Source: Monocercomonoides exilis PA203
Taxonomy: Eukaryota > Protista > Preaxostyla
Assembly: GCA_001643675.2 (NCBI GenBank)
Contig: LSRY02000025.1
Coordinates: forward strand, 1,272,747 to 1,336,746
Reading direction: 5' to 3'
DNA: 64,000 nucleotides
Shown one piece after another: positions 7,061 to 51,647 of the stretch. The position numbers and the translations under genes were made by a program. The stretch's first letter is position 1, and each line of letters opens with the position of its first letter. Under the pieces are notes generated by a model. That model saw nothing but the letters and a program-made list of their open reading frames with translations. It was not told the DNA's origin and made no database searches.

Positions 7061-7218
7061 ACCATGGGTGCTTAACCCGCACCCTGGTGCCAAACCCGCA
7101 CCCTGCAAATTTCTTGAAAATCTAAAAGTCAATTTTTTCCTTTCAAAGAAGTTCATTGATGATGAAATTGCTCGAAACAGGTTTCAAAAAATACTATATG
7201 GCATAATCTTTTTGAAAA
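7061..7218 (+). repeat. Left TIR of outer element (~158 bp), containing direct repeat AACCCGCACCCTG x2
   Basis: Reverse complement found at 36108-36246 plus 28455-28477. Confidence 0.9.
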
Positions 7219-7747
7219 ATCAGAGATCTTCCCGTTATTGTTTTTTATGAAATTAATAATAATGTATCCAAAAACGATTATGTACCATTTATATATTTAT
7301 CACAAGCAAAACACATTTCCCAATTTTTGTTATTTTCCACAAACCAAAATAGCTTTCATAAAAATAAATTTTAAAGGGAAGTTGTTAATTCATTAACAAT
7401 TCATATTTTCATTGATATGTGAAGAATTCGTTATTTTCATGGTTTGTATTTAAAAAGACTTTTCAAACCACATATTTTGTGATGATGATTATATATTATT
7501 CGAAAATTATAACAACAATAAGAATTTTAATTTTCTTTATTGAAAATGAAGTGTGAATAAAAAAAAAGAGTTATCGTTTGCATTTAAATTGCATTTATCA
7601 TGTGTGTTCTATTATTTATCATTAATATTTTAAGTTATTTATTTTTTAACATTCATTTTTTGACTAATGAAAATAACAAATTAATCATTCTTTTATATCT
7701 TTTTAATAATCTTTTGAAAAGTAACACATAATTTCCAACACAGGAAA

Positions 7748-8344
7748 ATGTATGTTTTGGATCAAATAGTTAAGCTGTTCATGCTGCTTTATGGAAGGAA
7801 TGAGAAGAAGGAGATGGAGATTGGCGCTTTGCAGAAAATAGAACAAACTGCTTCCCTGATCCTGTTCAAGGGATACAATCTCGCGCTTTATTCATTTGAT
7901 GAAATGGAAAACCCTCTTCAATCGCTTTCAAATTTGAGTCCTCACATTGTATTATTCTCAGAACACATGGTGATCTGCATTGTGATGCACTCCGACTTAT
8001 TGTCCGATGATGATTCAGACTCATCGTCCATCTCTTCATCAACAGTTGCAACGTCTGCCAGTGACGACGATGATGATGACTCTCTGCCCTCATCAGCCTT
8101 TGAGGATGAAGATTATTACAAAAAAGAGTGTCTGAGGTGGAAGGCGCCTGAGCTGCTGATGAACAAGAAGATGAGGGCAACCAAGGAGTCGGTTTCATTC
8201 TCAATTGGGATGATGCTGTGGGAGTGCCTGACCCTTCAAATCCCATTTGGAGAATATGAGGCTGTGACAGCAGGGCAGAAGATTGTGAATCGGGAGAGGC
8301 CAATCTTGTGCAGTTGGGATAGTAACAAAATTTGTGTCTGTTGA
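7748..8344 (+). pseudogene. Fragment of the pseudokinase tail (paralog of the C-terminus of 19..5982), cargo of the outer element
   Basis: LFMLL.GRNEKKEM...NLSPHIVLFSEHMVICIVMHSD...RWKAPELL...GQKIVNRERP is highly similar to the gene at 19-5982, but lacks the TM and extracellular parts. Confidence 0.85.
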
Positions 8345-8999
8345 AGCGCACACGCCGTCAGAAGCGTGAGAGTGGTTGATGCTTTGCGAGCTGCGGCATT
8401 TGTTTTTTGGGCATTTTTGGGAAAGAGTAGAGATAGTGTAGATATCGGATTCAATTGCCCTGAAGGAAACAACACAGAATGACAAGCAAAGCCTAACTTT
8501 GGAAACTACGTTCATCAATGGAAGTTCAAAGTGCGAAAAGTGGATTAAATGCTGGTGATAATTGTTCTCTGTTAAGAAAGTATTTTCGTTTTCAAATCAA
8601 CCTCAATATTTTCATTTATTTTTTCGAGAGAATTTCTCTCTACGCAGTTTGGTTCTGAATTTTTTCGCATTTCTTCTTTTATCAGATATCGTGTTTAAAG
8701 AGTTCGTATGTTGTGCGGAACTTTCTATATTTTATTTTCAGCAAAGAATATCCAATTTTTTTGTGCAATACATAATTATTTATATATCTTTGTTTTTTTT
8801 ATAAATAAGGCCTCTATTTTTAAATAAAGCTAATTCTTGTTATTTTTGTAAATTTCGAAAAAATATGTTTTTTAATATTGGTGAAATTGAAAATATATAA
8901 TTAATGCAAAAGATGCATGATCAAGTTGATTAAGTGCAAAATCAAAATGACACAGAATCATTTTCAAAAAAATTGGATTTATTTTATTTCATTTTCATC

Positions 9000-11270
9000 A
9001 GCACTCTCCACCCTTTCTTTCGTTAAAGCCTCCATTCGATGCACATCCTCCGTATCCACCTCCAAAATCAAAACTTCTTCCTTCTCGTCCACCTCTTTTT
9101 CTTCTCCTGCATTCACTTCAACTTCCAAAGCCCCGCCCTTTTCTAATGCTTCTTTCTTTGCCTCTTCCAACGCTTCCTTCATTCCTGTTTCGTTCTCTGT
9201 TCACAACAGAGACCACTTCTCTGGCAACAACCTTCGGTTGCTCTGTAACAGTTGTTGGAAATAAAAAGCGGGACATGTCAGATTCTCAACAAATGTGTCC
9301 ATTGGATTACACTTTACGAAAGCACGAACACTGAACAATGCACACCCAAATAACAAGGTCCGGAAAAGTTTCTTCTGCCTTGCGGTGATGGAAGCAGTGA
9401 TATGAAGCTTTGACTCACTGACCGATTGTGCTCATTCACTACAAAGAACAAAGTCTTTATCTCAATAGCACATGTAATAAACGCAAACATTTTGAGTTTC
9501 TTTTTGTATCAAACTTTTTGTGATTATGTTTGAAGCAACATAATCAACACGTTCTTCCAAACTTTCTTCTCCAACCATTCTTTTTTCTTAATTCCGTAAA
9601 TAACTGCTTCTTCATCATATTTTCTTTCCTTTTTCTCTTTTTGTCTCTTTCTTTCTCTTTCAGCTTCTATTTTCAATTTTTTCCCCTTCCTCTTTTATTA
9701 TTCGTCTTTTGAATCCTCCTCTTCTTCTTCCGTACAAAACTTCTCCCTTTCATATTGCTCTGTTCTCTTCGCCTGTACCATCTTCCTTCAGTTCTTTATA
9801 CACAACAGTGCAACATATTTGAAGAACGAGACAAGCGAGTGTTAAATAGCTCTAATCGGTTCTGCTGCATCCCATCCAGCTGCCTTCATCATCTGTGCCT
9901 ATGTTGTAGCCGAAATGAAATTGAATCGCAATCAGCCTTTCCATTCCTTCATCTTCTGGATTAACTCATCTGTCTAGTTGCACGTCGCAATGCATATCCA
10001 TCCCCGTACGCATCAGCATGTTCTTCCAGAACAAGAAACGTTGGTCTCTGTTTTCGTCCGGGAAAACTTAACAATTATCAGTTCTTCATGTGGATAATCA
10101 AAGCCCCATGTTGTCAAATCTGTTGCAGAAAAAACCTCAATAAAACCCATTAAAAATAACTTCGGTGTATGTTCACTCTGAGCAGGCGAAATCACCATTC
10201 GATTACTTACAGTGGAAAGACTTCAACTCAGCACACATACACAGCTCGTAAGCCTCGGCCTTCTTGTCAGTGAAGATGACGAACAATCTGTGAATTTCTC
10301 AAAAGTCATTGAACACTCTCCAATAATTCCATTGAACTCCTCACACGAGGTTGCCATAACACTGCACTTCACACCAGATGAAATAGCAAACATATATGAA
10401 CCAACATGATCATCATAAACAGAATTGAGCTTCAGAAATAGATATTGCATCGCATGTGGTTGACATGCAGCAGCAGTGTGACAAAGAACAAAATGACTGA
10501 AGGTTCAAACTCGCCTAGGAAAGGTTGATGGACATGGTTGTTGAGCCATGAAAAAATAAAGAAAAAGAAGTTCAAAAGCTTATTTGAAATCGCGATGGCG
10601 AGTGAGTTGGTGAAGATAAGCTTTGCTTTGGATCTGAACACCAAAAAAACTTTTTGTACTGATCAGTCCTCACTTTCTCCGTCTTTTTTGCCACATCTAG
10701 AAGCATCCCGAAGCAATCAAAAGGCGAATTCAATTAGCATCTCCACGTCTGGCACGAATCCAAAGTTCAGTATCCTGTCAATCTCATCAATTGCAAATAA
10801 ACCCAAAGCATTATGGTCTCTCCTTTTTCCCTTGATCGAAACCTTCTTCTCCTTTGAAAGTATTTCTTGTATTATAACTGCCCCATCCTGGGTCCTTCCA
10901 CACGATAATGTTTTTTTGTTTCATCAGATCAAAAAGTTGGCCTGGAGTCGCACAAGCCACGTCTGTTCCGCTGGATTTTATGCTCCATTGCTCCGTGCTC
11001 GATTCCATCCCAATGTGTAGTCTCCTTTGATATTCAGCCTGTTTGTGGTTTCGATGGCACTCAGGTGAAAGCTTTGAATCCGAGCACTCGGAAGCCTGCA
11101 ACTTTTCCAGAGAAATAACAGTAGATTCTGTGAAAGAAGAATGTGAGAAAGAAGAAGAAAATGAGGGATTCCCTATTTATAGTCGGAATGCAATTATTAA
11201 ACATGTTGGGAACACATTCATAATGATTGATTCACAAAAGGATCCGATTTGAACAGTGAATACTTTGGTT
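9000..11270 (-). pseudogene. Degenerate DEAD-box RNA helicase (DDX21/DDX50-like); boundaries approximate
   Basis: Minus-strand pieces in the expected order across frameshifts and stops: DVACATPGQLFDL (Ib), FAIDEIDRILNFGFVPDVE (II), SATDLTTWGFDYPHEELII (V), TETNVSCSGRTC (VI). Confidence 0.75.
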
Positions 11271-12699
11271 GGCGCATGTACAACAAGTAGTTCCGCTTTT
11301 TTTTCTTTAATCACCTTCCATTTTCAAAGAGTTTTCCTGTTTTTAACAATTATAAAATTTTTTTTAACAATCAAAAGAATAGAAATACAAATAAAGAATT
11401 AGAAAAGTAAAACAAGTTGCTGAAGGCACAAACCTAGATAAACGAAAGTATTTCTTTTATATTCAGAGTGAGAAACTTGAAATATATAAAATACTCTTCA
11501 TTCCGTCATTAATCTCTCTGCGGATAGGAAAAAGTTTATCAAAACCAATCATTTTTGAAATTCGTTCATGGATAATCAAATTTGCACATGAACGCCATAT
11601 TATTATTAGATTATCTTGTTATTTCCCATTCGTCAAGCCACTACAGAAATAATTAAAAATTGATCTTGGATAAATAACAATACTATTAAAAGCTTTTTTT
11701 CAGAATTGTCAAAATTCCAAAAGCAAACCATGTGTAAGGATGATTCTCAAGATGGGCATCATGCATGCAGAATAAAAGAAACGGGTCAGAAATTCTTTTT
11801 GAAAAATCAGAGATCGTCTGACATTTGCTTTTTTTCAAATAATAAATAATATAACATTTTGCAACGTTGTTCCATTGAAGTGCAAATTACAATATCAACA
11901 TTAATTTCACTTTTCAAAAGTTTTCGAAGAACCAAAATTGCATTCATGAAAATAAACACCTAAAAGAAATGTTTTGAATGAACTTTTCCGATTTTTATCT
12001 ATCCACAATGCAACAATGGTTTATTTTGTTAATTTCTTATGGATATTTAAATTACGAATATTGAAAAATGCATTATGTTCCTGTTTGAATGTTTTCTGTC
12101 GCAGTGAACACTTGTTAAATTATATTTGTTGAAAAAATTTAACCAACAAACATTTTTCATATTTGTATAAACCAATCCTTTGATTCAAGTTCAGATATGT
12201 TAGTTGCTTTTTTTTTTTGCAGTTTTTTAATAAACAACAATAATTTAAGGACAAATGGTTGTTACACATTCATTATTCTTTGTTTCTACTCGATTGACAA
12301 AAAACAGTTAGAAGGTTGGACACATAAATGAAGGTTTAATTCTAAACAAAGAAACTCGTTGTAAATGTTTCTTTATTAAACACATAACAAATAGAAAATG
12401 GCAATCTATTCGGATATGGAAAAATTGAATGTGATGTTGCACGGAAAAGAAGATGAGAAGAGGTTCATATGCCACTGTGCGCTGAGCTTGCAGAGCTGTA
12501 GAACTCAGAAGATTTGTTTGAATCGGAAAATTTTTGTTTGTGTCCTTCTTTTCTTCGCCCAGGCTTTGGTTAGCTTATCGCTCGCTATGATTAGCTAGAA
12601 TTCTTTGGTATTCTTTTCCTACAGCAATCTTTCGCTCCTTCGTTGAATTTCAAGCAACACTGCACATCCTCTTCATCTTCAAAAGTGAAAACTCAACAG

Positions 12700-14663
12700 A
12701 TTTTCTCAGCCATCATTCGGAGGAGAAAAAAAAATTGGATATTCCACAGGCTTACTCAGGCTTTGCTTTGAAGAAGGCGCTGCTATCGCTTTGAATGAAG
12801 CGGAATTAGTAATGAAATTATTTAAATCACGTGAGTGGTATATTGGAGGTTACTGGTTAATTACAAGTTGTGTCTTGCATTTGGATGAATATATCATTGC
12901 AGTGTCTATGGAAACAATGCAGAATGTCAAAAAAGGTGACGAGGAAGTTTCATTTGCTTTCTTCTTCTTCTTCTTCCTCCTCTTTTTCTTCTTCTTCCTT
13001 CTCCAGTCGTATTTCTTCTCCTTCTGCTTCATTCTTATCAATGATATCTTCTTCATCATCTTCTCTTTTATCTTCTTCTATTTTATCTGCAAATAATTCT
13101 TATTTTCATTCTTCTCAATCTTCTCAATCTTCTCATTCTTCTCATTCTTCTCATTCTTCTCATTCTTCTCAATCTTCCTCTTCCTCTTCTTCTTCTTCAT
13201 CTCATCCTCTTCATCATCACCACCGCCACCATTGTCCAATCCATTTCACTCCCAATCTCCAAATGTTACCCCTTCTAACTCACACGTCCAGGTTCTGTCT
13301 CCACAACACGCAGATACCGGCTTCCACATAATGTGTTCACGTCATCTTGCTCCTTTCGCTTCTCCTCTCCCCACTTTTCTACACACATCGGTCCATCTCC
13401 TTATTCCCACCCCTGCATCTTCCTCTACCCCGATGTCACCTCCTCTCACCTTCTCCTCTTTTTCGTCCAGAGTTAAAGAGTTAGAAAGACGAAGATTGCG
13501 GTGCTTTCACGAGCTGATGAAGCTGCAAAAGCAGAAAAATGTTCGTTTAATGGAAGCATTGAGTCTTTAAGGCTGATGAAGCTAAGAGCAGAGGAAGAGA
13601 CAGGCTCCTGTGATAGATACAACGAAGAAGATGAGGAAAATGAGGAATTAGAAGAAGAAGAGTTCGATGGGGAAGCAGACGAAGAGAGAGGAGGGTTCTG
13701 TTTGTATGATGTTGATAATTGGAGCGACAAGACAGACTATGCAGAGACAAAGACAGAAGCAGAAGCGTCAGAGAAGGATAGGAAGAAGAAGAGGAGGAAA
13801 GAAGAGTTCATTCTGGAGGTTTGTGCAGACGGCAGATTCACGACGATGATGAGCGAGAGAAACCTGATGCAAAACCAGAGGGAGAAGGAGAAGAGATTGA
13901 TAAGGAGGAAGATAATGATGAAGCAGATGAAGAAGGATGATGATGTGTTTCGTGAAAGCGAGTGGTTATCTCCATGGTGCGAATTGGGAAGCAGAGGAGG
14001 AGGAAGAAGAGAGGAAAGAAGAAACAGAGGAAGAGAAGGAGGAAGTGATAGAGGAATCAGCAAAGGAGGAGGAGATGGTAATGGAGGAGGAGGAAGAGGA
14101 GGAACAGTGGTAAGAGAGAGGAGCGAAGGGAGAGAAGAAAGAGAGAAGGAGGAGCTGCAGTATGAGCAAGTGATGCTGTTGAAGAAAACGGGGCTGGTGT
14201 TTGAAGGGAGAGAAGTGAGTGAGATATGAATTTTGTATGACAGCGAGATAATCCTCAACTTGGGCAATGAAGTCGGATGAGAGGCAGAAGAAGAAGAGCA
14301 AAGTTTGCCAAGAAGGCAGAGAACGCCAAAGAAGCACAGGAGACAGAGAGTGAACTACGAAGAAAACGAGCATTTTGCACTGCAGCATCAGTAGAGTGGC
14401 TCGAAAGTGCCTGGCTCAGATTCGATTCTCTTGAGTCATTCGATTTCTGAACATCCGTTTGCATTGTCTGCCTTTTCTGCTTCTTCTCTTCATCTTCTTC
14501 ATCTTCTTCATCTTCTTCATCTTCTTCATCTTCTTCATCTTCTTCATCTTCTTCATCTTCTTCTTCTTCTTCATCTTCTTCATCTTCTTCATCTTCTTCA
14601 TCTTCTTCATCTTCTTCATCTTCTTCATCTTCTTCATCTTCTTCATCTTCTTCTTCTTCTTCA

Positions 14664-14695
<32 letters not shown>

Positions 14696-15200
14696 ATCAT
14701 CATCATCTTCTTCTTCTTCTTCTTCAACAGATTCTTCTTCTCCATTCACATTCAGTGAAAATGTCGCTTTGCTTGAATCACCAGGTCTTCGTGTGTGTTT
14801 GTTTGAGCAAACGGAAGAAGAAAGAGAGAAAGAGAAAGCGAAAAAAGAAGGAAAAGCTAAAAAAATGAGAAATTCAAAAAGGATAAAGAAAATTATGAGA
14901 AAAATATGAAGAATAATGAGAAAGAGGAGTGGAAAGGAGAGAAAAAGAAAAAAGGGGTAAAGGAAAAGAAAGTTAAAGAAAAGGAAAAGATGAAAAAGAT
15001 GAAAAAGAAGAAAACATTGGACAAATCAAACAAAAAATCACTTCTTCCAACCAAACAACTCCCTCCCCCAATCATCTTCACTTCAATTCAACTAATCATT
15101 CCACATCTTCTTTCGTTTCTCGTTTATCCTCAGTACCTTCTCATTCTTCTCTTCCTCCTCTTCCTCTTCCTCTTCTTCCTCTTCCTCTTCTTCACCTTCT
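12700..15200. other. Low-complexity, broken gene fragments (Ser/Glu/Gly-rich) within the outer element's cargo
   Basis: Purine/pyrimidine-skewed coding-like runs with stops and frameshifts; no recognisable domain. Confidence 0.4.
14488..14727. repeat. (CTTCATCTT)n / (CTT)n micro-minisatellite
   Basis: Direct inspection; it generates the spurious EED/LLH/KKM ORFs. Confidence 0.95.
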
Positions 15201-16709
15201 CCATCTTCTCCTTTCTATTTCTTCATTCGTTTCAATTTTTTCTTTCCCATCTCTTTTTCCTCCTGCATCACACCTTCATCCACATCTTCCTCTTCTTCAA
15301 TAAATATAACTTCTTTTGTTGCATTGTCGTTGACTTGTTTTTGGTCAGTGAGAACTTTGCGGCGAATTGGCTCAATGTCAGAATCTTCAGTCTCATCGTA
15401 ATTTTCGTTATCATCAATATTTTCAGTTGAAAGCTTATTTGGAAAAATAATTCTGCCTTCTTCATTCTCTTTATCAATAACTTTCAACTTCTCTAATCTC
15501 CTTTTATATAATGAAATTGTTGAGGACCCTGTTGAAACATCTTCTTTGCAAATGTATTGACGGCTTGTTGATTGTTTTTTGTTCAAATGAAAAACACTTT
15601 CAAATGAGATCTTTCTCCATCTACTAACGGAAGAATTGAAAAAAGGAGTCACTTCAATTTGTGCTTTAGTGGATCTCCAACACAAATAAGTTTTTATATC
15701 CTTCACGACAAGCTTCAAGCTTGTCTTTGGCTTGATTCTGGGAGAGTAATCGATGATGAATCTCTCCAATCTTTTATCCTCCTTTCTTTCATTTTTTGGG
15801 AATGCTTTGTGAAAGAAAGTGATCAAATCCTTGAGGGTGGAGATGTCCTTGCGAGATCTTTGAACGATTCTCGCAAGGACTCCAAATTCCCCATCAACCT
15901 CGCTTTTCCCGTGACCTTCTCCGAAAAAGGAAAGCGAGGTTGTATCAAATGTTTCATGAATGGAGGAAGACGGATGAAGCAAAAAAAAGAGAAAGCAGCC
16001 GTTTCTGAAGTGTGGACCGCAGTCTGTCCACACTTTCAGATGAGAATTAGGCCTTTGCGACACAGAAAAAATTTTCGTTTGTGTCGGTCGTTTAAGTCGG
16101 CTCGTGTCGGAATCAATTTATGAGTAAAAAATCTTTCAAATAAATATTTTCTTTTTAAAAAAATTTCAAATTAACAAACTTTTCTTTATTTTTTGTGTAT
16201 TCAGGAAAAAAATAAATTTTTTTATAAAAAATTCCCATTATTCTTTTTGAATTTAAAAATTTTAATGGGATTGATCAAATATTTTCTGGATGTTTTGTTG
16301 TTTTTTCAAGCAAATACAAATTCAGTCAATCTTCTTTTTGAATGAATAAGATGAAAAATTAATATGTTCACATATTAACCACACAAAAGATGGTTGTTTT
16401 CGGTTCCAACAACTGTGTTTTCTGTTTTTTTTTTTGATATATAAAAAGTCGTGAATTTAATCATTTCAGTTTGTTGATCTTCATTATGAATGTTTTATTT
16501 TGAACGCCAATCAGTTTTCTTTGAAGTTTGAGATTGCTTTATGCAAACAAAGAATAACAGATAAATGAGAAAAAGAAGGGGCTATCTAGGAATAAAATGA
16601 AATGAAAACATATATCGATGTGACAAAATGAACAGTGAAGAAGAATAGTGAAAAAGCAGAAAAGGAAATTTGAAGAAAAAATAACAACAAAATTTTGAAG
16701 AAAAAAGAT

Positions 16710-16770
<61 letters not shown>
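16710..16770. repeat. ~61-nt poly(T) tract
   Basis: Direct inspection. Confidence 0.95.
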
Positions 16771-16771
<1 letters not shown>

Positions 16772-16789
16772 GAGTCGTTGAATATTTTA

Positions 16790-17500
16790 AATCTGAGAGT
16801 GATCAGCAATTCACATTTACAGAAAATATCTCCACAAAGTCGCTGAATGGGCATTGGAAAAAGTTGAGGAAGAAGAGACAAGAAAGCAAACACTATCACC
16901 TTCAATTTTCTCGGCTGACACAGAAACAACTTTTGAAAAGCAGAAGATTTGTGCCCTCTTTCTCATCCATTTCGATCTTTGTGAATACAAAGGATTGCTC
17001 GTCTCCTCATGAAAAACTGATTGCTTACTCAAAGGATTCGTTGTCTATGCTGCAACATGGGATGAACGAGAAGAAAGAGATGGCAATTGGCACTCTGCAG
17101 GAGAGGGAGCAGACAGCAGCTCAAATCCTGTTCTGGGTGGCAAATGGAGCTCTCAACTCATTTGATGAAATGAAAATTCCGCTTCAATCACTGGCAAATC
17201 TGAGTCCGCATATTGTATTGTTCTCGGAGCATATGATCATCACAATTGCACTTCATTTTGACAGTTCAACCGACTCAGACAAGTCATCCATCTCATCCAC
17301 TTCCACGATTGTGACACTTCGTCTGATGGCTCGCTGATGAATAAGAATGGAAAAGACTCTCCACCACCTTCATCAGCGTTTGAGGACGAGGCAGACAATA
17401 GAGAGGAGTGTCTGAGGTGGAAAGCGCCAGAGCTGCAGATGAACAAGAAGATGAGGGCAACAAAGGAATCGGTACTGTTCTCAATTGGGATGTTGTGGAT
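16790..17500 (+). pseudogene. Second pseudokinase-tail fragment (frameshifted), cargo of the hAT element
   Basis: CSSPHEKLI...EKKEMAIGTLQEREQTAAQILFWVAN...NLSPHIVLFSEHM, then a frameshift, then PSSAFEDE...ECLRWKAPEL...SIGML. Confidence 0.85.
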
Positions 17501-17899
17501 AAAGTTCTTAATAGAAGTTATTTTTTTGTTCTTAGAAAATATTCGTTTGTGAATTTTGTTTTTTTCTATATTTCATGACCAACATTTCAACATTCCATGT
17601 TTTTCATTTCTTATCATTGTTTCTCTTATTTTTGAAGTTACTCATTTTTGTTCTCATATTTCACATATGTTTCATCTATTTTAATAATATATTTAATATA
17701 AATATTTTGTTGATCTGAACTTTTGTATTGATTTATTTTTGTTTTCTATGCACTTCACCTTATTTATTTTCTATGTTTGCTCCTGTTATTATTTAAATTT
17801 TTAATTATCAATATTTCTGATTCTGGATGAAGAATATGAAATTAACAAATAAAAAAACATTAATTAATTATGTCCATTTGTCGTTAAATCAGTTTTTCA

Positions 17900-19240: not shown

Positions 19241-19399
19241 TCAGTTGGAAAATGGAAATACCATGCATATTCCTCTAGTTTTCGTGCAATTCAGCTTCGT
19301 GGTCTGTTCTCCACATTCATCGTTTCCATTTATTTGCATTCTGTTTGTGGTTTTGTAAACACTAGAGTGAAAGCATTTTATCTGCATAAGGTGAATTCT

Positions 19400-26310: not shown

Positions 26311-27380
26311 TAAAGCAGAAGAAGGCGGAGATGCTGCGCTGCATGTAGGAGTGAGCTGAAGCGAAGGAAATGGAGCAGAAGAAGGCTGCGAAGACGAGGT
26401 GCCTGCAGGATTGAGCTGAAGCGAAGGAAATGGAGCAGAAGAAGGAGGCGTTGATGGGATGCCTGCAGGATTGAGCTGAAGCGAAGGAAATGGAGCAGAA
26501 GAAGGCTGCGAAGACGTGGTGCTCATTGGATAGCGAGAAAATGAGGGAAACGGAGCAGAAGAAGGCTGCGAAGACGTGGAGCCTGCAGGATTGAGCTGAA
26601 GCGAAGAAAACGAAGCAGAAGAAGGCGGAGATGCTTCGATGCTTGTTGGAGTGAGCTGAAGCGAAGGAAATGGAGCAGAAGAAGGCTGCGAAGACGAGGT
26701 GCCTGCAGGATTGAGCTGAAGCGAAGATAACGAAGCAGAAGAAGGAGGCGTTGATGGGATGCTTGTTGGAGTCAGCAGAAGCGAAGGAAATGGAGCAGAA
26801 GAAGGCTGCGAAGACGAGGTGCCTGCAGGATTGAGCTGAAGCGAAGGAAATGGAGCAGAAGAAGGAGGCGTTGATGGGATGCCTGCAGGATTGAGCTGAA
26901 GCGAAGGAAATGGAGCAGAAGAAGGCTGCGAAGACGTGGTGCTCATTGGATAGCGAGAAAATGAGGGAAACGGAGCAGAAGAAGGCTGCGAAGACGTGGA
27001 GCCTGCAGGATTGAGCTGAAGCGAAGAAAACGAAGCAGAAGAAGGCGGAGATGCTTCGATGCTTGTTGGAGTGAGCTGAAGCGAAGGAAATGGAGCAGAA
27101 GAAGGCTGCGAAGACGTGGAGCCTGCAGGATTGAGCTGAAGCGAAGATAACGAAGCAGAAGAAGGAGGCGTTGATGGGATGCTTGTTGGAGTTAGCAGAA
27201 GCGAAGGAAATGGAGCAGAAGAAGGCTGCGAAGACGTGGTGCTCATTGGATGGCGAGAAAATGAGGGAAACGGAGCAGAAGAAGGCTGCGAAGACGTGGA
27301 GCCTGCAGGATTGAGCTGAAGCGAAGAAAACGAAGCAGAAGAAGGCGGAGATGCTTCGATGCTTGTTGGAGTGAGCTGAA
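26311..27380 (-). repeat. Coding 60-bp minisatellite (~18 units, 20-aa S/P/T-rich) with a 420-bp higher-order repeat, in exon 3 of the Sola2-like transposase
   Basis: 26401-26820 is nearly identical to 26821-27240; peptide unit resembles SSQPSSAPFPSLQLNPAGTS. Confidence 0.95.
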
Positions 27381-28477
27381 AATGAGAAAATGGTGATGTT
27401 AATGTTTGAGAATGTGCAGAGCAGAATGGTTTGTGATTGAAAGGATGAATAAGATCTGAACTATGTATGTGATTGTTTTCTTTTGTTGTATTTTCTTGAT
27501 ATCTGGATGTTTTTTGAATACATGAATGATTATTTGTAATTTCATTAAAACTATCCTGATGAAAATAATGTTGATCTTGATGAATAAGACAGTTTTGTTT
27601 TGTGTGCTCAGATATATTCTTTTTTTTGATAAGTTTGAACTTTGAAACAAAGTGCATATTTGAAAGAGCTTGAATATCTTCAAAATTGAATAAAATTGGT
27701 GATGACTGTAGATCATTTGTTGATGAATGATGATTTGAGTTTAAGAATTCAAAGTCATCATCTGATAAATCTTTAAAAATTCTTGTTTCTTGAATGTTTT
27801 GAACTTTGCAACTTTCACTTGTGTTCTTCCTTAACCACCATTCACATAAATAAAAATCATATAAACTCAATGCTTATGTTTCAATATAGCTTTGAATGAG
27901 AAATGAAAAAAAAAACGAACGTTTTTTACTGTTGGGAATCTTCGGTTTGCATGCAGCAGTTATTTCCAAATTGTGCCTTTTCAACATTCTCTCAGCGTGT
28001 AAAATGTTATTCGCTGTACAATTCCAGCCAGCTTTTATAAGTTCAGTTGAAGAAAATGATCTCAAAAATGTTTGTAACAAGAGTATTTTATTCTTTTTGT
28101 CTAAGATATCGTACAATGAACCAGCGTAAATTAGAATGTTTTCCATTTTATCTATTCAATCAAAAGAAGAGAAAACAAAAAATGAAACTCAATAAAAAAA
28201 CATTGATATAACCATTTAGTTTATTGTTAAGCAATTCAAGAATTTCTTTTCCTTTTTTTGAATGGTACAAAAAGAAAAGAAGAAAAGATGTTTCCTCATT
28301 CTTTGAATGATGTTGAAGAAATTCAAAAAGTTTTTTACATAGTTGAGACTTTCTGCTTTCAGACAAATCTGAAAACGTCATCTTTCTAAAAATAAAATTA
28401 TCGTGGGATAATTTTTTTTGATCTTTTATGGGATCACAATTAAAGTTTTCCGACTTTTCAAAAAGATTATGCCATAT

Positions 28478-31400
28478 TCTATTTTTTTAATCAAAAATTT
28501 TCAAAAAGATGAATTTTTTATAATTTTGCTCCTAAAAGAGCATTATCGATTTTTACTGAAAAAGAACAAAAGAAGAGTTAAAAAAATATGTGCATGCTTG
28601 TTTGTTAATGTGTTTTCAAATATCTTTATTCGTTTTTTGGATTTGAAGTATTCAGCAATAAATATCACATTTTTCTTTGTTAGATCGTGCCCATAAATAT
28701 GTGAAAAACAAATAGAAAGTTCTTCAGCTTCGTCGAAAGGGGTTTGTTGAAGTTATTTCTTATGCTTTTTAATCAAAAATCGCTCTTCTTATTAATGTAC
28801 ATTGAAAATTTCATAGTTCCATGTATTTATTAATGAGCTGTTATTGCATTTATTAAACACAAAATATTCAATGTCAATCGGATAATATCACTGTGATAAT
28901 AGTACTATTTAATTAAAGAATTTTATTTCATTGTTATGTATTATTTGGGTGATTTTTTTTGATATCATAAAAAAAGATCAAAAATTGAAAAAATAAAATC
29001 TATAGTGGTATTTATTGATCAAAGAGTTAAATTGATTTTTGCAGATATTCAGCTTAAATATCTGTAATATATGTTTGTTTTATTTTAATATGCAAAAATT
29101 CATACCTCTTTTATGATTTAAGTGTGAAAGGTTCTTTGATCAAGTTAATTAAAAATAAACTTTAAACAAATAAATAAAACTTCAAAAGGAAATGATAAGT
29201 TTCATGACTTGCAAAACAAAACTCATTAAGTGGAATTTTATTTATACAACAATGTTGATGGATATTAACGTTCAAAATAACATTGCTTCAAATAACATGC
29301 ATTGAGTTTTGCTTTCATTGAGGGAAAACTTCATCACCAATTTCCTGCTGCAGCTGAGCAGTTCAACGACTTATTATAATAACGAAATGAATGGAGTTAA
29401 AACAACAATTGATGATCACAATAGAGTCTATCTCACTTTTCTCTTCAAATTCTTTTTATGAAATGATTTTCTAGTTTTCTTCTCCATCCGCTGTCCATCT
29501 TTCTTCTGTTTCTGCTCCACTTCATCAAAATCCCCCATTTGAAAATGCTGCCCATGTTGTGCACTTTCATTCATATTGTTTTCGTTATTTATCTTTCATA
29601 ACACTGCTTCATTGCTTCTCTCTCTGAAAAACTATTAAAGCTTTTTCTGCGAATTTGTGTCATTCATTTACTTAATTTTCTTATCCTCTCAGCCATTTCC
29701 CTCTTCCTCGATCACACATTCATCACCAGTCTCACTTTCAACAACCTCACAATATTCCATCTCATATCTCTCGCAAACCCCTTCTCTTTCTATTCCTTTA
29801 ACAGTTCCAAGAGTTCCATGAGCAGAGTAAATTTGGAACACAGAAACCAGCAAACTTCCGTTGGCCACATGTTTTCCTTGACATAAAAATCAGCAAATTC
29901 AGAATCATTGAAGAGGTGAACAAAGAACGAAGAACGAAGAAGAAGAAGAGGAGGAGGAGGAGGAAGAGTGAGAAGGAGAAGGAGAAGGAGAAGGAAGAAA
30001 AAGCATATTTTGCCATTAGATATGATCGAAATATCGTTGGTTATAAATTTCACTGCATATGATAAACACATTGACAAGTGAAGATACAGAAAGAGTGGTA
30101 ACCAGGAAGATCTTTCAATTATTGTACTAACAGAAACATCGTATTCCTCAATTTTCTCACAAAATGTGCGGATTAATCAGATTTTTTATATATCTTCACT
30201 CGCCTCTTTCGGGATATTCTTATTAAACAAAGGAAAATACAAGTTATTCTCGAACTTTAATAGATGCTCTTCTTCCACTTCTTCTGACTCTTCTTCTTCA
30301 TTCTTCATTTTTTCTTTTTTCAACTGGAGCAGGGTGCCTGTCGGCTTCGCCATTCAGTGGGAGAAGAAGCGAATAGAAGAAGGAAACAGGAGGTGATAAG
30401 CCATTTTCATCTTCATCTTCATCAATAGCATCTGCGATTGATCCCACAGATGCATCTGTCTTGGAAGCATCATACGCGTCGGCAGCAGAAATGGAAGAAA
30501 TAGAAAGGTGGCTGAGGTGAATATGAGTCGCATGCCACTGTGTATACTGTTGCTGCTTGTGCTGTCGCAACGTGAATTTGTTGAAGTCATATGAAATATG
30601 CTGAGTGGGGTTGTTGGACATCCCTGTAATGTGGTGCTTTGGAGATGCTTTCTGTTTTGTGGGTGGAGCAGATTCTTTTGTTTGCTACTTCGATGTGAAC
30701 GAAATCGGAGAGCAAATATCTGTTCTGCAGTGAATGTGAATGTGTTCTTGAAGGTTATAATCTGTTTGCCTCTTCGTTGCTTCTATCTGCGATAGTGTTG
30801 ATGGATTTTTTTATCACTGCAGTCGATGCGTTTTGTAACGAAGATGGACAATGATGTGATTGGGCGAAGGATGACGGAATGTTATGAGAGGAAGAAGTTA
30901 GGGAGAAGGTGATGGAGAAGGAGGGGTTGAGGATGGAGGACGTGATTCTGAGACCAGCAGTGATCACTCCGGTAGTTCTTGAGGAGCGATAAGAGGCAGT
31001 ATGGGATAAGGAGGGAGAAGAAGAAGAACTGAATGAAGATAATGATGTGGAAGTTGAAGGAGAAGAAAAAGTGGGAAATGAAAAAGAAGTGAATAAAGAT
31101 GATGGTTGGAAAATGAAAATTTTAACAAAGTTAATGGTGTTTCGATAATTTGCTGCTGAATCCTTCTTCGATTTTTGATTTCAGGTGGAAATCAAAACAA
31201 GTTGTGGTTAGAATTGTCATTGATTTATTCTTCGTCTCCACTCCTTTCATCTTCTCTTTTGAGAAACATTCTTTCAAGGTCTTTCTTATTTCTCTGTCAA
31301 ATACCTCTTTCTCCCTACTCCTCCTTTTCATCTACCCAAATCCCCAGCATGCCACGAATGCTGCACAGTTCAGCACCATCTTCAGCTGCTCAAGCACATC

Positions 31401-34400
31401 CCTCGTTGCTGACGTTATGCTGCTTACAAACACGCCTTCATTGCCCAATCTGCTTTTCCCAAGAATCGCACATGTAATGGCGGTGAGAAGGAAGAAATGG
31501 AAAAAGAAGGAGATAAAGAATGATATGACATGTTCGATGTGCAGAAGGACTTCTGTGTCAGCGAAGAGGAGTCCGCAGAGAGAGACGATGGAGTGAATGG
31601 CTTTGGTTGAGTACCAATAAGAACAGAAGTGGCAGAAAATTGTGAGTGTGGCAAGGGAGAAAAAGGAAGAGAAGCAAATGTTGAGGGGGATGTGATGTTT
31701 TGAGTGTGCAGCTGGGAAGATGAGAGTGCACTGTCGAATAAGCAAAACCACTGCTGCAGTTCATCATTGTCATCATCATCACCTCCACTCTTCTCTCCTC
31801 CTTCTTTCCGTTGTGCCTGTGCAAGCCTTGTGTCGAAAGAGTCAACTTGTGATGGGCAAAACTCGTCTTTCTCCTTCGTCTTCGTCTTCGTCTTTGGCTC
31901 CTCCTACTATATCTCTTTCCTCTGCTCTGCGCTGAATTTGCTTCTGATATCCGCCTTCTTTGCCTTTTCCATTTGAACACGCTGTCCTCTCTTCGTTCCT
32001 TGCTAGTATCACAAAGAAAGAGCATGAGTGCGACGTATCTAGCAGCTCCTTCCCCCTTCCGCTTGCATTTCTCGTTCGATACCCATTCATCTCATTCTGA
32101 ACATCCAGCACACGGATGTCGTTCGAAATGCTGAAACAGAGTGGGGTGTGCGGCTGCAGAAGAGGAAAGCAGTTTATATGCGCATCCAGCGAAGCTGCAG
32201 AAGGCTTCGACAGCGATGATGTTGCTATTGCGAGGATGAAAAGAGAATGATATAATTAATGGCGAGCTTTATCAAGCTGCTGATTGAACAGCAAATATTC
32301 ATTCGAAGGAAAATGGAATGATCCAATACGAAGTGGTTGGAAATATCATTGAAAAAGAGAAGGAATGTGAATACTTGCAGTTACAGAGAAATCCATTTAT
32401 TGTCTTTATAAATTTTCGAAGAAGATGCTGATATGGTTTCATATGATTTCATTGATTGGACAATATATTGTGTCTGTTGAGAAAACTTCGAAGGAGCAGC
32501 TAGTTGTAATCAAAATATTATTATCAGGCAGATTCAAGATTTTCAATAAAATCGGATATCCCCGAATCTTTAGTAGCTTTTGAGTGATTCTCTTACAATT
32601 CTTGCCACAAACAGAAAATGATTCTTGCCTGTTTGGACGAAAAATATCAGTGTTCAAAACATCTGATGAGATTAATAGGAAAAAATGAAAAGAAGGTCAA
32701 GAAGAACACGAAGACGAAGGCGAAGAATAAGAATAATAATAATAAGCAATGTTTGACTGAAGAAGATTTCGTGCGTTTTTGGATACGCGGTTCACAACAG
32801 GCGTGCTTGTCGCTGAATAAACAGGTGAATTGTGAGAAGGCGAATTTTGTGTTTGTAAACCGAAAAATGAGGATGATGATCGATTGAATGAAGGAGGATT
32901 AACTGAAGAAGAAGAAGATGAAGAAGAAGAAGACGAAGAAGAAGATGCAGTTGAGAAATGTTCAATCAGTCAAATAACATTTCTGAAATAAATGACAAGA
33001 GCGCTTTGCGTGATGTTGTTGATTGGCCAAAACGGCTCGCTTGCTGTATAAACTTCAGATTTGTTTGTAAAATTCAATCACAATATTTGTGACGAATAAA
33101 TTGTGGAAATCAACATTGCATATTTTTCCAAAGGCAATTCACTTTCTTTTTGCAATTTCCCCTCCTTTCCCCTCAAAATTAGAAAATGTTGATTTTTCTC
33201 AATTTCAATTCCCTTCTTCCATTCAACCCCCAAAATCATCAGAAAATATAAATCCCTCCTTTTCTTCATCTTTCCCATTCTCTTCCAAAATATCTTCTCC
33301 TCTCATAAAAAATACCCCTCTTCCATTTGAACACTTCAGAATATTCATCTTCTTTCCCGCTTTTACCCTCTTTTCTTTCTTTTCAAAATCCATATCTCCC
33401 ATCAACAATAAACGCTTCTTTACCATCTTCCTCCACTTCTCAACATATTTTCCACATTTTCTTCTCCAAATCTCTGCCTGTTCCTTCCCCATCACTCTGT
33501 CTCGGATTTTCTTCCATTCTAATATCATTCTTGAAGCATTAACATTCTCAAAAATACTCAACTCCAACTCTCTGCCACAAATAATACTCTTCCATCACTT
33601 GTCGGAACCATATCCTTCCTGAACATGTTGTTGATGAGATAAACGAGATATACAATTTTGAATGTTTGAGAATATTATTAAAGGAGAAGATCATGGCCGA
33701 AAAGAAAAAATACCTCTGCACATCTACTGCAACGTGTGCGGGCTGAGAAGACCCTCCAGTGAGATACATTATATATTTTGTGGAGATTCTTTCATTGTTG
33801 CATTCAACCATTCTGATCCTGAAATGAAGAGATTGATTTTTTGTATGATGATAGCTGTGGAGATGAGGCTGTTGATACAATCCAGATGAAGAGCAGTTTG
33901 GTATTTATTTGTTTTTCTTTATATGAACATTTATCTGTTGAATGTTTTTGTGTTGTTTTCAGGGCAGGAAGTGGAAAAGAATGAAAATGAATGAAAGCGG
34001 AATATTTCGTTGTTCAGGGTAAGTATCAAGTTGAGAGAGCACAATCATATGAAAAGTACCCTGGATGAAGGGATTCGAATGAAATTGGAGATGATTTATT
34101 CTGATGAAAAACAAGCTGTTTTGAATCGAAAAAGATGGAATTCGAGCAGAAATCAAAAGTTAAGCATTTTTTTAGAAGAGCAAGAAATCGATGCTTTTGA
34201 TGGAGAAATGACTTCTGGAAAGGATGGACGATGAATCAGAGGATGAAACGCTAGAAAATTGATTGTTTTCATTTTCACTTTATCAATTTCAACTTATCTT
34301 TTTCCATTTCTTTTCCAATTGCATTATTTAACTAATTTTCGTGTATTAAATTTATTTATTTCGTTATCTCAATTATTGTGATCATGTTTATTAATTCAGA

Positions 34401-36107
34401 AAACTTAAGTTATGTTTTGTTTGTCATATTTTCAAAATTTCCAAATGCTTTTTTATGTTTTTTTCAAATTTTGAAATAAAAACAATTAAAATCAAATTAA
34501 AAGCAACAAATAATTAATAACAATAATATTAAAAAACTTTATTTTCATGTAATTTCAAATTAAATTTTTCTTTTCAACCCAATTCTTTAAGAAATAATTT
34601 TTTGATCAAACGTCGGAAATTTTTATGATATCAAAAAAAATCACCCATTTATTATATATTCTATTTGTTATAATATGTTTCTTTTGTGTCCCATTTGCAA
34701 AAGTTATATTTTGCGAATATATTAATTGTTTGCTGTTAGCAGCATTTTAATCTTTATAACATCTTAACTGTTGATCATTGATAATATTTAGAGAGCAAAT
34801 ATTTGCATGTTGATTTTGAAAACTTTGATTTTTTATATTGGAATGAAACTATTTTATTGATTTATTATGTTTCTGTGGAATTGCTAAAACTTACAAATGA
34901 TTGAAAAGTTGCAGTTTTCTTGATTATTTGCAATATCATCGAAAGTTTATGTTCCATTTTTGTACATTATGCTTGTATTTTTAAACTCTATTCAATTTTG
35001 TTTTTGATTCAAATTTCACTATTTCAACAAAAATCGAACTGTAATAGCTCATTGGTAATAAAAGGCTTATGATATAATTATTGTGCCCAATATCAAAGTG
35101 TATTGATAATGAAAAAATCATGAAAAAGCATGTTTAAATGGAATTTTGACGTTGATTGTTTCAATGAAGCGTTAAAATGGATATTGCAGATTTTTTTCAA
35201 TTTCAATAAATAATATTACCGAGTGAATTGTTTAAAAAACTTTTAGAATTGTTTTTTGCTGTTTTAATGATGAAAACAAATCTTAAAAATATTGAAATCA
35301 CATTAATATCTAGAATGAGTTTGAAAATTTGCATAAAGTGCAACTTGGAAAAAAAACTATTTGTAAAGTCCAACAATAAATAAATAGTAACTTTTTTATT
35401 GTTAACAACGAAAACAGTTTCGAACAACAGTTTAATTAAGAAAATTACAAATCTAAAAAATAGAACTTTTCTAACTGAATTGAAAAAATTGATTCAAGAA
35501 AACGAAACTTGTAAAAAGTTTTAATTCATTTAACATTAATATGTTCGATGAGAATCAGCAAATAATAGATTCATCAACTAAAATCAATTAATTTATATTG
35601 AGTAAATAAATTTGTGAATAAAAAAACAGTCGAATATAATCAACAAATAATTGAAGAAATAATATACTGATAATTAAATCAAAAAATTATCAAAGCACTA
35701 TTTCATTAATGAAACGAAAAAATTCAACATAAATAAATATAAATAAAACTTGACATATTTTAACAGAACTATGAAATTTTCAATGTACATTAATAAGAAG
35801 AGCGATTTTTGATTAAAAAGCATAAGAAATAACTTCAACAAACCCCTTTCGACGAAGCTGAAGAACTTTCTATTTGTTTTTCACATATTTATGGGCACGA
35901 TCTAACAAAGAAAAATGTGATATTTATTGCTGAATACTTCAAATCCAAAAAACGAATAAAGATATTTGAAAACACATTAACAAACAAGCATGCACATATT
36001 TTTTTAACTCTTCTTTTGTTCTTTTTCAGTAAAAATCGATAATGCTCTTTTAGGAGCAAAATTATAAAAAATTCATCTTTTTGAAAATTTTTGATTAAAA
36101 AAATAGA
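28478..36107. mobile_element. 7.6-kb non-autonomous long-TIR element inserted inside the outer element's right TIR
   Basis: 28478-28819 is the reverse complement of 35766-36107 (342 bp). Flanked by duplicated ATAT (28474-28477 / 36108-36111). Removing it restores the outer TIR exactly. The interior holds broken gene fragments and no recognisable transposase. Confidence 0.8.
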
Positions 36108-36246
36108 ATATAGTATTTTTTGAAACCTGTTTCGAGCAATTTCATCATCAATGAACTTCTTTGAAAGGAAAAAATTGACTTTTAGATTTTCAAGAAATTT
36201 GCAGGGTGCGGGTTTGGCACCAGGGTGCGGGTTAAGCACCCATGGT
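36108..36246 (-). repeat. Outer portion of the right TIR of the outer element
   Basis: Reverse complement of 7061-7199. Confidence 0.9.
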
Positions 36247-36404
36247 ATATATTTTAATTAATTCATTATTTGGTTTTTTCACAGGGGACAAAATGTGGGA
36301 ATTTAGGTGTTTTAATAGAAAAATTTGCACTGGGAATCATTTGAATTTTGTCCAAAAACAACGAGAAAAAGAATCTTATAAAAAAATTCGAAGTTATTCA
36401 ATGA

Positions 36405-51155: not shown

Positions 51156-51482
51156 AAAATTAGATTTATTTTGAAATCTGAGAAAGTGAAATGAAGTTAT
51201 GAGTGAAGCATTTTTTTCATGCTTTGTGCAAAAAAAGCTTGAAAGACCATATTTTCCCCCAAATGAATTTTCAGTCATTTTTCAGTTAAAACAGATAATA
51301 TTTTTTTTCTCTCCAAAGAGAAGTCTGACAACAATTCCACCTATCAACATCATCAAGTCAACAATCCATGGATATTTATGTGAATTATCCTCAGGATCAA
51401 CCATGAGCTTCTCAAGATCTGAGAGAGAAGTTGTCAACTCTGAAGGAGAAGTTATCCCCATTGTAACTTTGGTGTGACAGGA

Positions 51483-51609: not shown

Positions 51610-51647
<38 letters not shown>

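What the first reader, a model, noticed from the sequence alone, without database searches (positions are those of the whole stretch)
7061..36246. A fully reconstructable three-element nest of large cargo-carrying DNA transposons at a chromosome end
Seen in sequence: an outer element with ~158-bp TIRs. A 9.4-kb hAT sits inside its transposase, and a 7.6-kb long-TIR element sits inside its right TIR. Each insertion has its own TIRs and target duplication. Removing both in silico regenerates an intact TIR pair, an uninterrupted ~1195-aa transposase and a ~12.2-kb element, of which ~8 kb is host-derived cargo. Inference: this genome has large Pack-type DNA transposons of several superfamilies that have transposed recently (the junctions are undecayed) and move host gene fragments. 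Both secondary insertions hit parts of the outer element needed for mobility.
Basis: partly seen in the sequence, partly recalled or inferred. Interest (0 to 1): 0.88.

Follow-up and report, generated by a model that had tools for sequence, protein, structure and literature searches.

The report
Four nested DNA transposons, re-parsed
This 29-kb stretch near a chromosome end of the mitochondrion-less protist Monocercomonoides exilis is a real pile-up of jumping genes, but it holds four elements nested in a different order than first read, all of known kinds, two of which carry dead pieces of host genes.

Summary
The parse is not. Copies elsewhere in the genome (M. exilis PA203, 82.3 Mb) show that the '158-bp TIR' is 138 bp of one element plus the 19-bp end of another.

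Corrected structure:
- F (7062-36245): a 2.2-kb, TA-flanked element with 478-bp perfect TIRs.
- Y (7200-28473): a Sola-type element inserted in F's left TIR, with target duplication ATAT.
- Z (28947-34646): a 5.7-kb non-autonomous element inserted in F's interior, with target duplication ATTT.
- A 9,379-bp hAT (16048-25426, target duplication ATGAGAAT) splits Y's DDD transposase gene between D1 and D2.

Paralogous copies supply an uninterrupted reference site for Y, Z and hAT. F, Y, Z and hAT all have copies at other loci. New flanks could be read for F, Y and Z, but not for the other hAT copies.

The transposase is not one uninterrupted 1195-aa frame. Intact paralogues have a 496-codon catalytic frame plus an upstream exon joined by a putative 83-nt intron.

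The cargo claim holds in part. Every Y and hAT copy checked carries a helicase remnant, and the copies that could be read also carry a receptor-kinase tail. These pieces were inherited with the families, not captured at this locus.

These are ordinary nested insertions of known superfamilies. Earlier notes of this scan already describe Sola-like and cargo-carrying elements on other DNA of this genome. Read support could not be checked.

The parts
7062..36245 (.). Element F. A long-TIR, TA-flanked element, probably of the Tc1/mariner-pogo type. Its backbone is 2,202 bp once Y and Z are removed. The TA duplications lie at 7060-7061 and 36246-36247.
   Evidence: At least 15 paired copies of about 2.2 kb elsewhere begin TA|CCATGGGTGC, each with different flanks. 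After Y is removed, the TIRs are 138/138 and 340/340 identical.
7062..7199 (+). The outer 138 bp of F's left TIR, cut off from the rest of the TIR by the Y insertion.
   Evidence: It is 100% identical to 36108-36245. In other F copies this segment runs straight into TCTATTTTTTTAATC....
7200..28473 (-). Element Y. An autonomous Sola-type element of 21,274 bp, or 11,887 bp without the hAT. TIR GGCATAATCTTTTTGAAAA. The ATAT duplication lies at 7196-7199 and 28474-28477.
   Evidence: Six other transposase-bearing copies share the right end, and the three left ends that could be read (C66, C24, C34) match too. The flanks differ at each locus, with 4-bp duplications ACCT, ATAT and ATTT.
7748..8344 (+). 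Cargo in Y: a fragment of the C-terminal kinase domain of the giant receptor-kinase gene family.
   Evidence: It is 82% identical in DNA to the neighbouring host gene at 5187-5718. Pfam PK_Tyr_Ser-Thr, E 2.7e-4, below the gathering cut-off. More than 3,600 genome candidates.
9749..11128 (-). Cargo in Y: a decayed DEAD-box helicase fragment, collinear with the one in the hAT.
   Evidence: tblastx shows collinearity with 18040-19430. Motif II and VI traces appear in the minus-strand ORFs. It is 67% identical to the host gene at C1:1784189-1785653.
15218..16047 (-). C-terminal half of Y's transposase, carrying D2 and D3.
   Evidence: 96% aa identity to the intact C66 copy. It matches the family HMM at 4.5e-52.
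16048..25426 (-). hAT element of 9,379 bp. 15-bp TIRs. The 8-bp duplication ATGAGAAT lies at 16040-16047 and 25427-25434.
   Evidence: Full-length copies at C42, C36 and C8 are 87-94% identical. The uninterrupted site is seen in the C66 Y copy.
22146..24740 (-). hAT transposase ORF (864 aa).
   Evidence: Pfam Dimer_Tnp_hAT, 23 bits against a cut-off of 21.4.
16855..19430 (.). Cargo in the hAT: a kinase tail on the plus strand (16855-17495) and a Helicase_C remnant on the minus strand (about 18040-19430).
   Evidence: A Helicase_C hit at window 18298-18573 contains one stop, and the same remnant is found in the C36, C8, C42 and C9 hAT copies.
25435..26092 (-). N-terminal half of the catalytic transposase frame (CxxC...H and D1).
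   Evidence: 95% aa identity to C66. Family HMM match at 4.3e-66.
26082..26164 (-). Putative 83-nt GT-AG intron joining the upstream exon to the catalytic exon.
   Evidence: The spacer is conserved in the window, C66 and C34, and the splice would be in frame. No RNA evidence.
26155..28155 (-). Upstream transposase exon(s): an N-terminal domain followed by an expanded 120-nt Ser/Pro-rich tandem repeat.
   Evidence: Tandem repeats. Residues 1-115 of an 854-aa single-ORF relative match 27736-28083. The ORF is 572 aa here and 412 aa in C66.
28478..28946 (+). F resumes here: the inner 340 bp of the left TIR and the start of F's interior.
   Evidence: Aligns with the C17 F copy up to the Z insertion point.
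28947..34646 (.). Element Z. A 5,700-bp non-autonomous member of a very abundant family with Sola-type ends. 27-bp TIR GGGTGATTTTTTTTGATATCATAAAAA. The ATTT duplication lies at 28943-28946 and 34647-34650.
   Evidence: The uninterrupted site is seen in the C17 F copy. There are 278 and 251 genome candidates for its two ends. It holds no transposase.
34651..36245 (-). The rest of F's interior and its complete right TIR (478 bp).

Best explanation
The region records four successive cut-and-paste insertions.

1. A 2.2-kb non-autonomous element, F, landed at a TA in AT-rich subtelomeric DNA. F has 478-bp TIRs and is probably mobilised in trans by a pogo/Tc1-type transposase.
2. An 11.9-kb autonomous Sola-type element, Y, then inserted at an ATAT site 138 bp inside F's left TIR. 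Y has 19-bp TIRs, 4-bp A-N-N-T duplications and a DDD RNase-H-fold transposase.
3. A 5.7-kb non-autonomous element, Z, inserted at an ATTT site in F's interior. Z has the same type of ends and target as Y.
4. A 9.4-kb hAT inserted into Y's transposase gene between the first and second catalytic aspartates, inactivating this copy.

Y and the hAT each carry a collinear, pseudogenised piece of host DNA: a receptor-kinase tail facing a DEAD-box helicase. Each element inherited this piece from its own family.

Shown: the boundaries, the duplications, the paralogous uninterrupted sites, the multi-copy families and the catalytic triad.

Inferred: the order of Y relative to Z, the identity of F's transposase, the splicing of Y's transposase, and how recent the events are.
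For: **F as a family.** The 138-bp and 340-bp segments are contiguous at both ends of at least 15 copies of about 2.2 kb. All begin TA|CCATGGGTGC and have unrelated flanks.

**Y as an independent element.** Its termini occur at C66, C24, C34, C35, C17 and C1, none of them next to F. The matching 4-bp duplications are ACCT, ATAT and ATTT. At least 8 transposase-less derivatives also exist.

**Uninterrupted reference sites.**
- F paralogues read ...tactATATtctattt across the Y insertion site.
- The C17 F copy reads ...tattATTTgttat at the Z insertion site.
- The C66 Y copy is continuous at the hAT insertion site.

**Reconstruction.** With the inserts removed, F's TIRs are 478/478 identical and its backbone is 2,202 bp. 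Removing the hAT restores the same 496-codon frame seen in C66 and C34.

**Transposase.** D126, D210, D253 and a C-x2-C...H motif are invariant in 40 relatives. The predicted structure has pLDDT 78.8, and its best structural matches are DDE transposases, integrases and RNase H. There are 813 relatives.

**Superfamily features from the literature.** Sola elements have a DDD transposase and 4-bp duplications (PMC10741241). An AWWT target and 5'-GG termini are described as the hallmark of Sola1 (PMC3845634).

**hAT.** The Pfam hATC domain scores above its cut-off. Four full-length paralogues exist.
Against: - An assembly error in a 29-kb repeat nest of an ONT assembly is therefore not formally excluded.
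- F's own transposase was not found. Only a distant F-like copy (C46) encloses a DDE_1 ORF.
- The 4-bp duplication of Y and Z can equally be read as a 2-bp duplication with TIRs one base longer. The base before the TIR is T in every end examined, while the first base of the duplication is only usually A.
- No reference Sola transposase was available for comparison.
- Letters of the other hAT copies could not be fetched, so their duplications were not checked.
Confidence: 0.85

Rival explanations
1. An outer 12.2-kb element with 158-bp TIRs carries the transposase. A 7.6-kb long-TIR element sits in its right TIR and the hAT sits in its transposase.
For: Within the window alone this parse is as exact as mine. 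Removing 28478-36107 plus ATAT rebuilds a 158-bp inverted repeat.
Against: Nowhere else in the genome is the 138-bp segment joined to Y's terminus. At least 15 loci join it to the 340-bp segment at both ends. Three Y copies read at both ends (C66, C24, C34) have non-F flanks and their own 4-bp duplications, and three more right ends (C35, C17, C1) also lie in non-F flanks. The '7.6-kb element' itself breaks down into the F backbone plus Z.
Confidence: 0.05
2. The inverted repeats are the ends of segmental inversions or duplications, or an assembly chimera of repeats, and not insertions.
For: The region is subtelomeric and repeat-rich in a Nanopore assembly. Read support could not be checked.
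Against: All four elements show exact duplications of the length expected for their class. Removing the three inner inserts gives reconstructions exact to the base, and paralogues supply the uninterrupted sites. All four families have copies at other loci, and new flanks were read for F, Y and Z.
Confidence: 0.05
3. F belongs to the same superfamily as Y and Z, meaning that all three make 2-bp duplications and are moved by Sola-type enzymes. It is not a Tc1/mariner-pogo element.
For: Y and Z duplications can be read as 2 bp, mostly TA. The C44 F-like copy contains a Sola-type 916-aa transposase.
Against: That transposase lies behind its own Z-type terminus inside the C44 copy, so it is nested. 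F's termini (CCATGGG) differ from the GG(C/G)... termini of Y and Z. F's duplication is TA at 27 of 28 ends. A DDE_1 ORF lies between F-like TIRs at C46.
Confidence: 0.1

Closest known systems
Sola superfamily of eukaryotic DNA transposons (Bao, Jurka & Kapitonov 2009, as summarised in PMC10741241 and PMC3845634)
   Same: Y has a DDD transposase and 4-bp target duplications. Its target is A-W-W-T-like (ATAT, ATTT, ACCT), its termini start 5'-GG, and its size falls in the 2-15+ kb range reported for Sola. Z and many MITEs share the same type of ends and target.
   Different: The subgroup is unresolved. The target hallmark fits Sola1, but other notes of this scan call the family Sola2-like, and no reference sequence could be compared. 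Y's transposase gene carries an expanded Ser/Pro tandem repeat and a putative intron. Y also carries host-gene fragments.
hAT superfamily (hobo/Ac/Tam3)
   Same: 8-bp duplication, short (15-bp) TIRs, and a transposase ending in the hAT dimerisation domain.
   Different: At 9.4 kb it is unusually large. About 6 kb is non-transposase material, including pseudogenised host kinase and helicase fragments that are kept in all full-length copies.
Long-TIR Tc1/mariner-pogo non-autonomous elements
   Same: F has TA duplications and TIRs of several hundred bp, encodes no transposase, and occurs as dozens of copies of uniform size.
   Different: The cognate transposase is not identified. The assignment rests on the TA duplication and on one distant F-like copy that encloses a DDE_1 ORF.
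Pack-MULE-type gene-fragment-carrying transposons
   Same: Fragments of unrelated host genes lie between transposon ends and are multiplied as passengers. At least 8 derivatives lacking the transposase exist.
   Different: The carriers are Sola-type and hAT elements in an oxymonad, and some still encode a transposase. The same two-gene cassette occurs in both superfamilies.

Membership tests
hAT | 8-bp target site duplication | tested here: met
   ATGAGAAT is found on both sides of the element. The C66 paralogue has a single copy of the site.
hAT | Short terminal inverted repeats | tested here: met
   15-bp perfect TIR TAGGCCTTTGCGACA.
hAT | Transposase with the C-terminal hAT dimerisation domain | tested here: met
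   PF05699 scores 23 bits against a cut-off of 21.4, at residues 810-863 of the 864-aa ORF.
hAT | Copies at other loci, each with its own duplication | tested here: inconclusive
   Full-length copies exist at C42, C36, C8 and C9. Their flanking letters could not be fetched.
Sola | DDD catalytic triad in an RNase-H-like fold | tested here: met
   D126, D210 and D253 are invariant in 40 relatives. The predicted fold matches DDE transposases and RNase H.
Sola | 4-bp target site duplication | tested here: met
   Y: ATAT, ACCT, ATAT and ATTT in four complete copies. Z: ATTT, with the uninterrupted site seen in a paralogue. A 2-bp reading cannot be formally excluded.
Sola (Sola1 group) | AWWT-like target and 5'-GG termini (PMC3845634) | tested here: met
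   In 18 of 18 Y and Z ends, T precedes 5'-GG, and the first base of the duplication is A in 17 of 18. Wider MITE ends agree less strictly.
Sola | Significant sequence similarity to reference Sola transposases (Repbase) | not testable with these tools
   No reference sequences were available. Pfam gives only weak DUF7869 hits, and the ESM Atlas neighbours are DUF7869 clusters.
Tc1/mariner-pogo (for F) | TA target site duplication | tested here: met
   27 of 28 ends of 14 copies are preceded by TA. Nothing beyond the TA is duplicated.
Tc1/mariner-pogo (for F) | Cognate DDE_1/DDE_3 transposase sharing the termini | tested here: inconclusive
   The genome has hundreds of DDE_1 and DDE_3 genes. 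One DDE_1 ORF lies between distant F-like TIRs at C46. No sequence letters were available to check its ends.
Pack-type cargo element | Host-gene fragments between the ends, with an intact host paralogue elsewhere | tested here: met
   The kinase tail is 82% identical to the adjacent host gene. The helicase remnant has an intact 881-aa-ORF paralogue at C1:1784 kb.
Pack-type cargo element | Cargo transposes with the element, meaning it is present in other copies | tested here: met
   Helicase_C remnants are found in hAT copies C36, C8, C42 and C9 and in Y copies C66, C24, C34 and C17. The cargo block is 82-93% identical in at least 8 transposase-less copies.

The most novel reading that the evidence does not exclude
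Sola-type and hAT elements of M. exilis share one collinear host cassette, a kinase tail facing a DEAD-box helicase. The cassette could have passed from one transposon family to the other through nests like this one. Transposon-borne kinase fragments might then account for part of the 35% 'unclassified repeats overlapping tyrosine kinases' reported for this genome (PMC8767320). This would make transposons a driver of the expansion, or of the apparent expansion, of its largest gene family.
Probability: 0.3. Interest if true: 0.5.

Novelty: new member of a known kind. Interest (0 to 1): 0.3.

Why it matters
Biologically this is an ordinary nested-transposon site. It has three modest uses.

1. 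It is a clean example of a parsing trap. An insertion into a TIR can be read two ways from a single locus, and only copies elsewhere in the genome settle which element is inside which.
2. It gives exact ends, duplications and uninterrupted reference sites for four families in a genome whose published repeat annotation is 35% 'unclassified' (PMC8767320).
3. It shows that pieces of the receptor-kinase family travel inside two transposon superfamilies. This bears on the published remark that unclassified repeats overlap kinase genes.

Other agents of this scan have already reported Sola-like and cargo-carrying elements on other DNA of this genome, so the kind of element is not new here.

Tried and rejected
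- **Fetching more paralogous loci.** The duplications of the other hAT copies, the C46 F-like element and the right ends of Z copies could not be read.
- **Read support.** Nothing further was tried, and read laying was not used.
- **Pfam on the intact transposase and on cargo ORFs.** There were no hits beyond weak DUF7869, the kinase tail and low-complexity noise.
- **Word-index homologue searches.** These returned almost nothing.
- **Primary literature.** The original Sola paper and the Yuan & Wessler catalytic-domain paper are not in the library. The Sola features cited here are therefore second-hand (PMC10741241, PMC3845634).
- **Structured RNA after Y's transposase gene.** Other notes report such an RNA in this genome. 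The 218 nt after the stop codon are purine-rich and give only z = -2.85, which is not convincing.
- **Joined transposase model.** The spliced, hAT-excised protein was not assembled or searched. Its exons were searched separately by reference. Only frame continuity was computed, in a script.
Full report
**Source and setting**

The window is contig C20:1272747-1336746 of an 82,301,135-bp genome in 101 contigs. That size and contig count match the published Nanopore assembly of Monocercomonoides exilis PA203 exactly (PMC8767320). A 100%-identical protein in the public collection is annotated as M. exilis MONOS_13523. The window ends in 3.6 kb of TTAGGG/TTAGG telomere, starting at 60381. The nest therefore lies about 24 kb from a chromosome end.

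- Inverted repeats lie at 7055-7220 / 36087-36252 and at 28469-28819 / 35766-36116.
- A blind scan looked for an 8-bp direct repeat flanking a matching 12-mer pair 9.0-9.9 kb apart. It returned a single hit, 16048-25426, with duplication ATGAGAAT and TIR TAGGCCTTTGCG.
- The 864-aa ORF inside that element ends in the hAT dimerisation domain, scoring above Pfam's cut-off.

**The topology is different**

I searched the genome with the 160-bp 'outer TIR'. About 20 pairs came back, mostly about 2.2 kb apart, and in most the match stops at position 139. Searching with the 350-bp 'long TIR' found the same loci, directly abutting those matches.

In at least 12 copies the sequence runs ...aaaaaatactATAT|TCTATTTTTTTAATC... 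without a break. The 138-bp and 340-bp segments are therefore one TIR of about 480 bp, belonging to a 2.2-kb family that I call F. All ends begin CCATGGGTGC. They are preceded by TA in 27 of 28 ends, and the flanks are otherwise unrelated.

- Y's right end occurs at six other loci: C66, C24, C34, C35, C17 and C1.
- Y's left end could be read at C66, C24 and C34.
- None of these loci lies next to F. Each has its own matching 4-bp duplication: ACCT, ATAT and ATTT.

In the window Y is flanked by ATAT on both sides, and F's intact right TIR holds a single ATAT at that position. Y (7200-28473) therefore inserted into F's left TIR.

The copies elsewhere in the genome decide between them.

**A fourth element**

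The C17 F copy aligns to 28478-28946 and resumes at 34647. The 5,700 bp in between has 27-bp TIRs (GGGTGATTTTTTTTGATATCATAAAAA) and an ATTT duplication, and the C17 copy has a single ATTT at that site.

This element, Z, has no transposase. Its ends are very common, with 278 and 251 first-look candidates. In several contigs these ends lie about 10 kb either side of the abundant ~1,100-aa transposase ORFs, for example C58:1869355...1890472.

Eleven left flanks read ATAT, ATTT, ATCT, AAAT, ACAT or TCAT before GGGTGA. This is the same target type as Y's.

With Y, Z and their duplications removed, F is 2,202 bp long and its TIRs are identical at 478 of 478 positions.

**The transposase**

Removing the hAT and one duplication copy gives a 496-codon open frame running from 26092 to 15218. 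The uninterrupted C66 and C34 paralogues have the same frame length, at 95-96% and 91% aa identity. The C66 copy reads straight through the insertion point.

The 572-aa ORF upstream (26152-27870) is in a different frame, behind a stop codon. It holds 8.6 copies of a 120-nt Ser/Pro-rich repeat and is 412 aa long in C66.

The spacer between the two ORFs is conserved in three copies. It contains an in-frame 83-nt GT...AG candidate intron. An 854-aa single-ORF relative covers both the N-terminal part and the catalytic part. A spliced product of about 1,100-1,200 aa is therefore plausible, but it is not an 'uninterrupted' frame, and I have no RNA evidence. The exons were searched separately.

An exhaustive HMMER search found 813 relatives. 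In an alignment of 40 of them, D64, C66, C69, H98, D126, D210, H247-G248-K249 and D253 are invariant. The hAT sits between D126 and D210. The AlphaFold model (pLDDT 78.8) matches the IstA, TnsB, Mos1 and Hermes transposases, retroviral integrases and RNase H, but none of them closely.

Pfam gives only sub-threshold DUF7869 hits, and the ESM Atlas neighbours are DUF7869 clusters.

A DDD enzyme with 4-bp duplications is the published description of Sola (PMC10741241). An AWWT target and 5'-GG termini are described as the hallmark of Sola1 (PMC3845634). Other notes of this scan call the family Sola2-like. I could not compare reference sequences, so I leave the subgroup open.

**Cargo**

Y's 8 kb downstream of the transposase, and 6 kb of the hAT, hold no transposase.
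- Y 7774-8302 is 82% identical to the C-terminal kinase region of the 1,987-aa host gene next door (5187-5718). hAT 16855-17495 is 70% identical to the same region. Pfam sees a kinase-domain fragment.
- Further along, Y 9749-11128 and hAT 18040-19430 are collinear. Their minus strand shows DEAD-box motif remnants.
- A genome-wide Helicase_C search hits the hAT cargo in the window with one stop codon. It also hits the same position in hAT copies C36, C8, C42 and C9 and in Y copies C66, C24, C34 and C17. An intact 881-aa-ORF helicase is found at C1:1784 kb. The cargo is 75% (hAT) and 67% (Y) identical to that gene.

Whole-element searches show that the hAT is conserved end to end in C42, C36 and C8 at 87-94% identity. 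Y's cargo block is 82-93% identical in at least 8 elements of 7.4-9.6 kb. Those elements keep Y-type ends but lack the transposase.

The window's Y is a mosaic. Its transposase module is 96% identical to C66's, but the similarity drops about 90 bp after the stop codon. The cargo module is closest to the C22 element, at 88-93%, against about 75% to C66.

The cargo is therefore host-derived in part, pseudogenised, and inherited with each family. Only the kinase tail and the helicase piece were shown to be host-derived. The remaining roughly 4-5 kb is conserved among copies but unidentified.

**F's superfamily**

TA duplications point to Tc1/mariner-pogo. The genome holds many DDE_3 and DDE_1 genes, and one DDE_1 ORF (C46:124546-124968) lies between distant F-like TIRs.

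The C44 F-like copy holds a 916-aa Sola-type transposase with a USP-like Cys/His box. However, that transposase lies behind its own Z-type terminus, so it is nested. F-type elements seem to be frequent landing pads for Sola-type insertions.

**Limits**

- Read-level support was unavailable.
- How recent the insertions are is inferred only from perfect duplications and F's perfect TIRs. The nearest paralogues of Y, Z and the hAT differ from the window copies by 4-12%.

**Verdict**

This is a real, exactly reconstructable nest. It holds four known-type elements in the order hAT inside Y inside F, with Z also inside F. It is not three elements around a 158-bp-TIR outer element.

Noticed in passing
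L035:7170-9920 (G000:C44:675169-677919), minus strand: A 916-aa ORF fuses a ubiquitin-specific-protease-like region (Cys box ...GNTCCLASLIQ..., His box ...GHFFCL...) to the N-terminal side of the Sola-type catalytic core. One public relative in alignment A1 has a Pfam UCH domain (E 1e-24). Other notes of this scan describe the same fusion.
   Followed up: partly
window 51436-52044 (+): A 3' fragment of eukaryotic LSU rRNA (Rfam RF02543, model positions 2391-3399) lies about 8 kb from the telomere. A tRNA lies at 38330-38400.
   Followed up: partly
window 37290-37715: Several MITE-sized elements with Z-type termini (GGGTGATTATTTTTGAAATCAT...) lie just outside F. One is a 254-bp copy at 37462-37715 flanked by ATAT. 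The same MITEs occur in many of the fetched loci.
   Followed up: partly
window 7748-19430; G000:C1:1784165-1785653: Y (Sola-type) and the hAT carry the same collinear cassette, a kinase tail on the plus strand facing a DEAD-box helicase remnant on the minus strand. Its 5' boundary in the kinase gene differs between the two (host positions 5187 and 4985). Whether one family obtained it from the other or both took it from a host locus is open.
   Followed up: partly
window 26313-27393 (minus-strand ORF): A 120-nt Ser/Pro-rich tandem repeat has expanded inside the upstream transposase exon. The ORF is 572 aa here, 412 aa in the C66 copy and 385 aa in C34.
   Followed up: partly
window 19-5982 (+): A giant open frame of more than 1,987 aa runs off the window start. 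It has repeated Cys/Gly-rich beta-helix-like modules, a transmembrane segment and a C-terminal kinase-like domain. It belongs to the expanded receptor-kinase family and ends about 1.1 kb before F.
   Followed up: no
G000, genome-wide: More than 100 loci hold Sola-type transposase frames of 1,000-1,430 aa without stops. Blattamonas nauphoetae, another oxymonad, has relatives. This suggests a large and possibly still active population.
   Followed up: no
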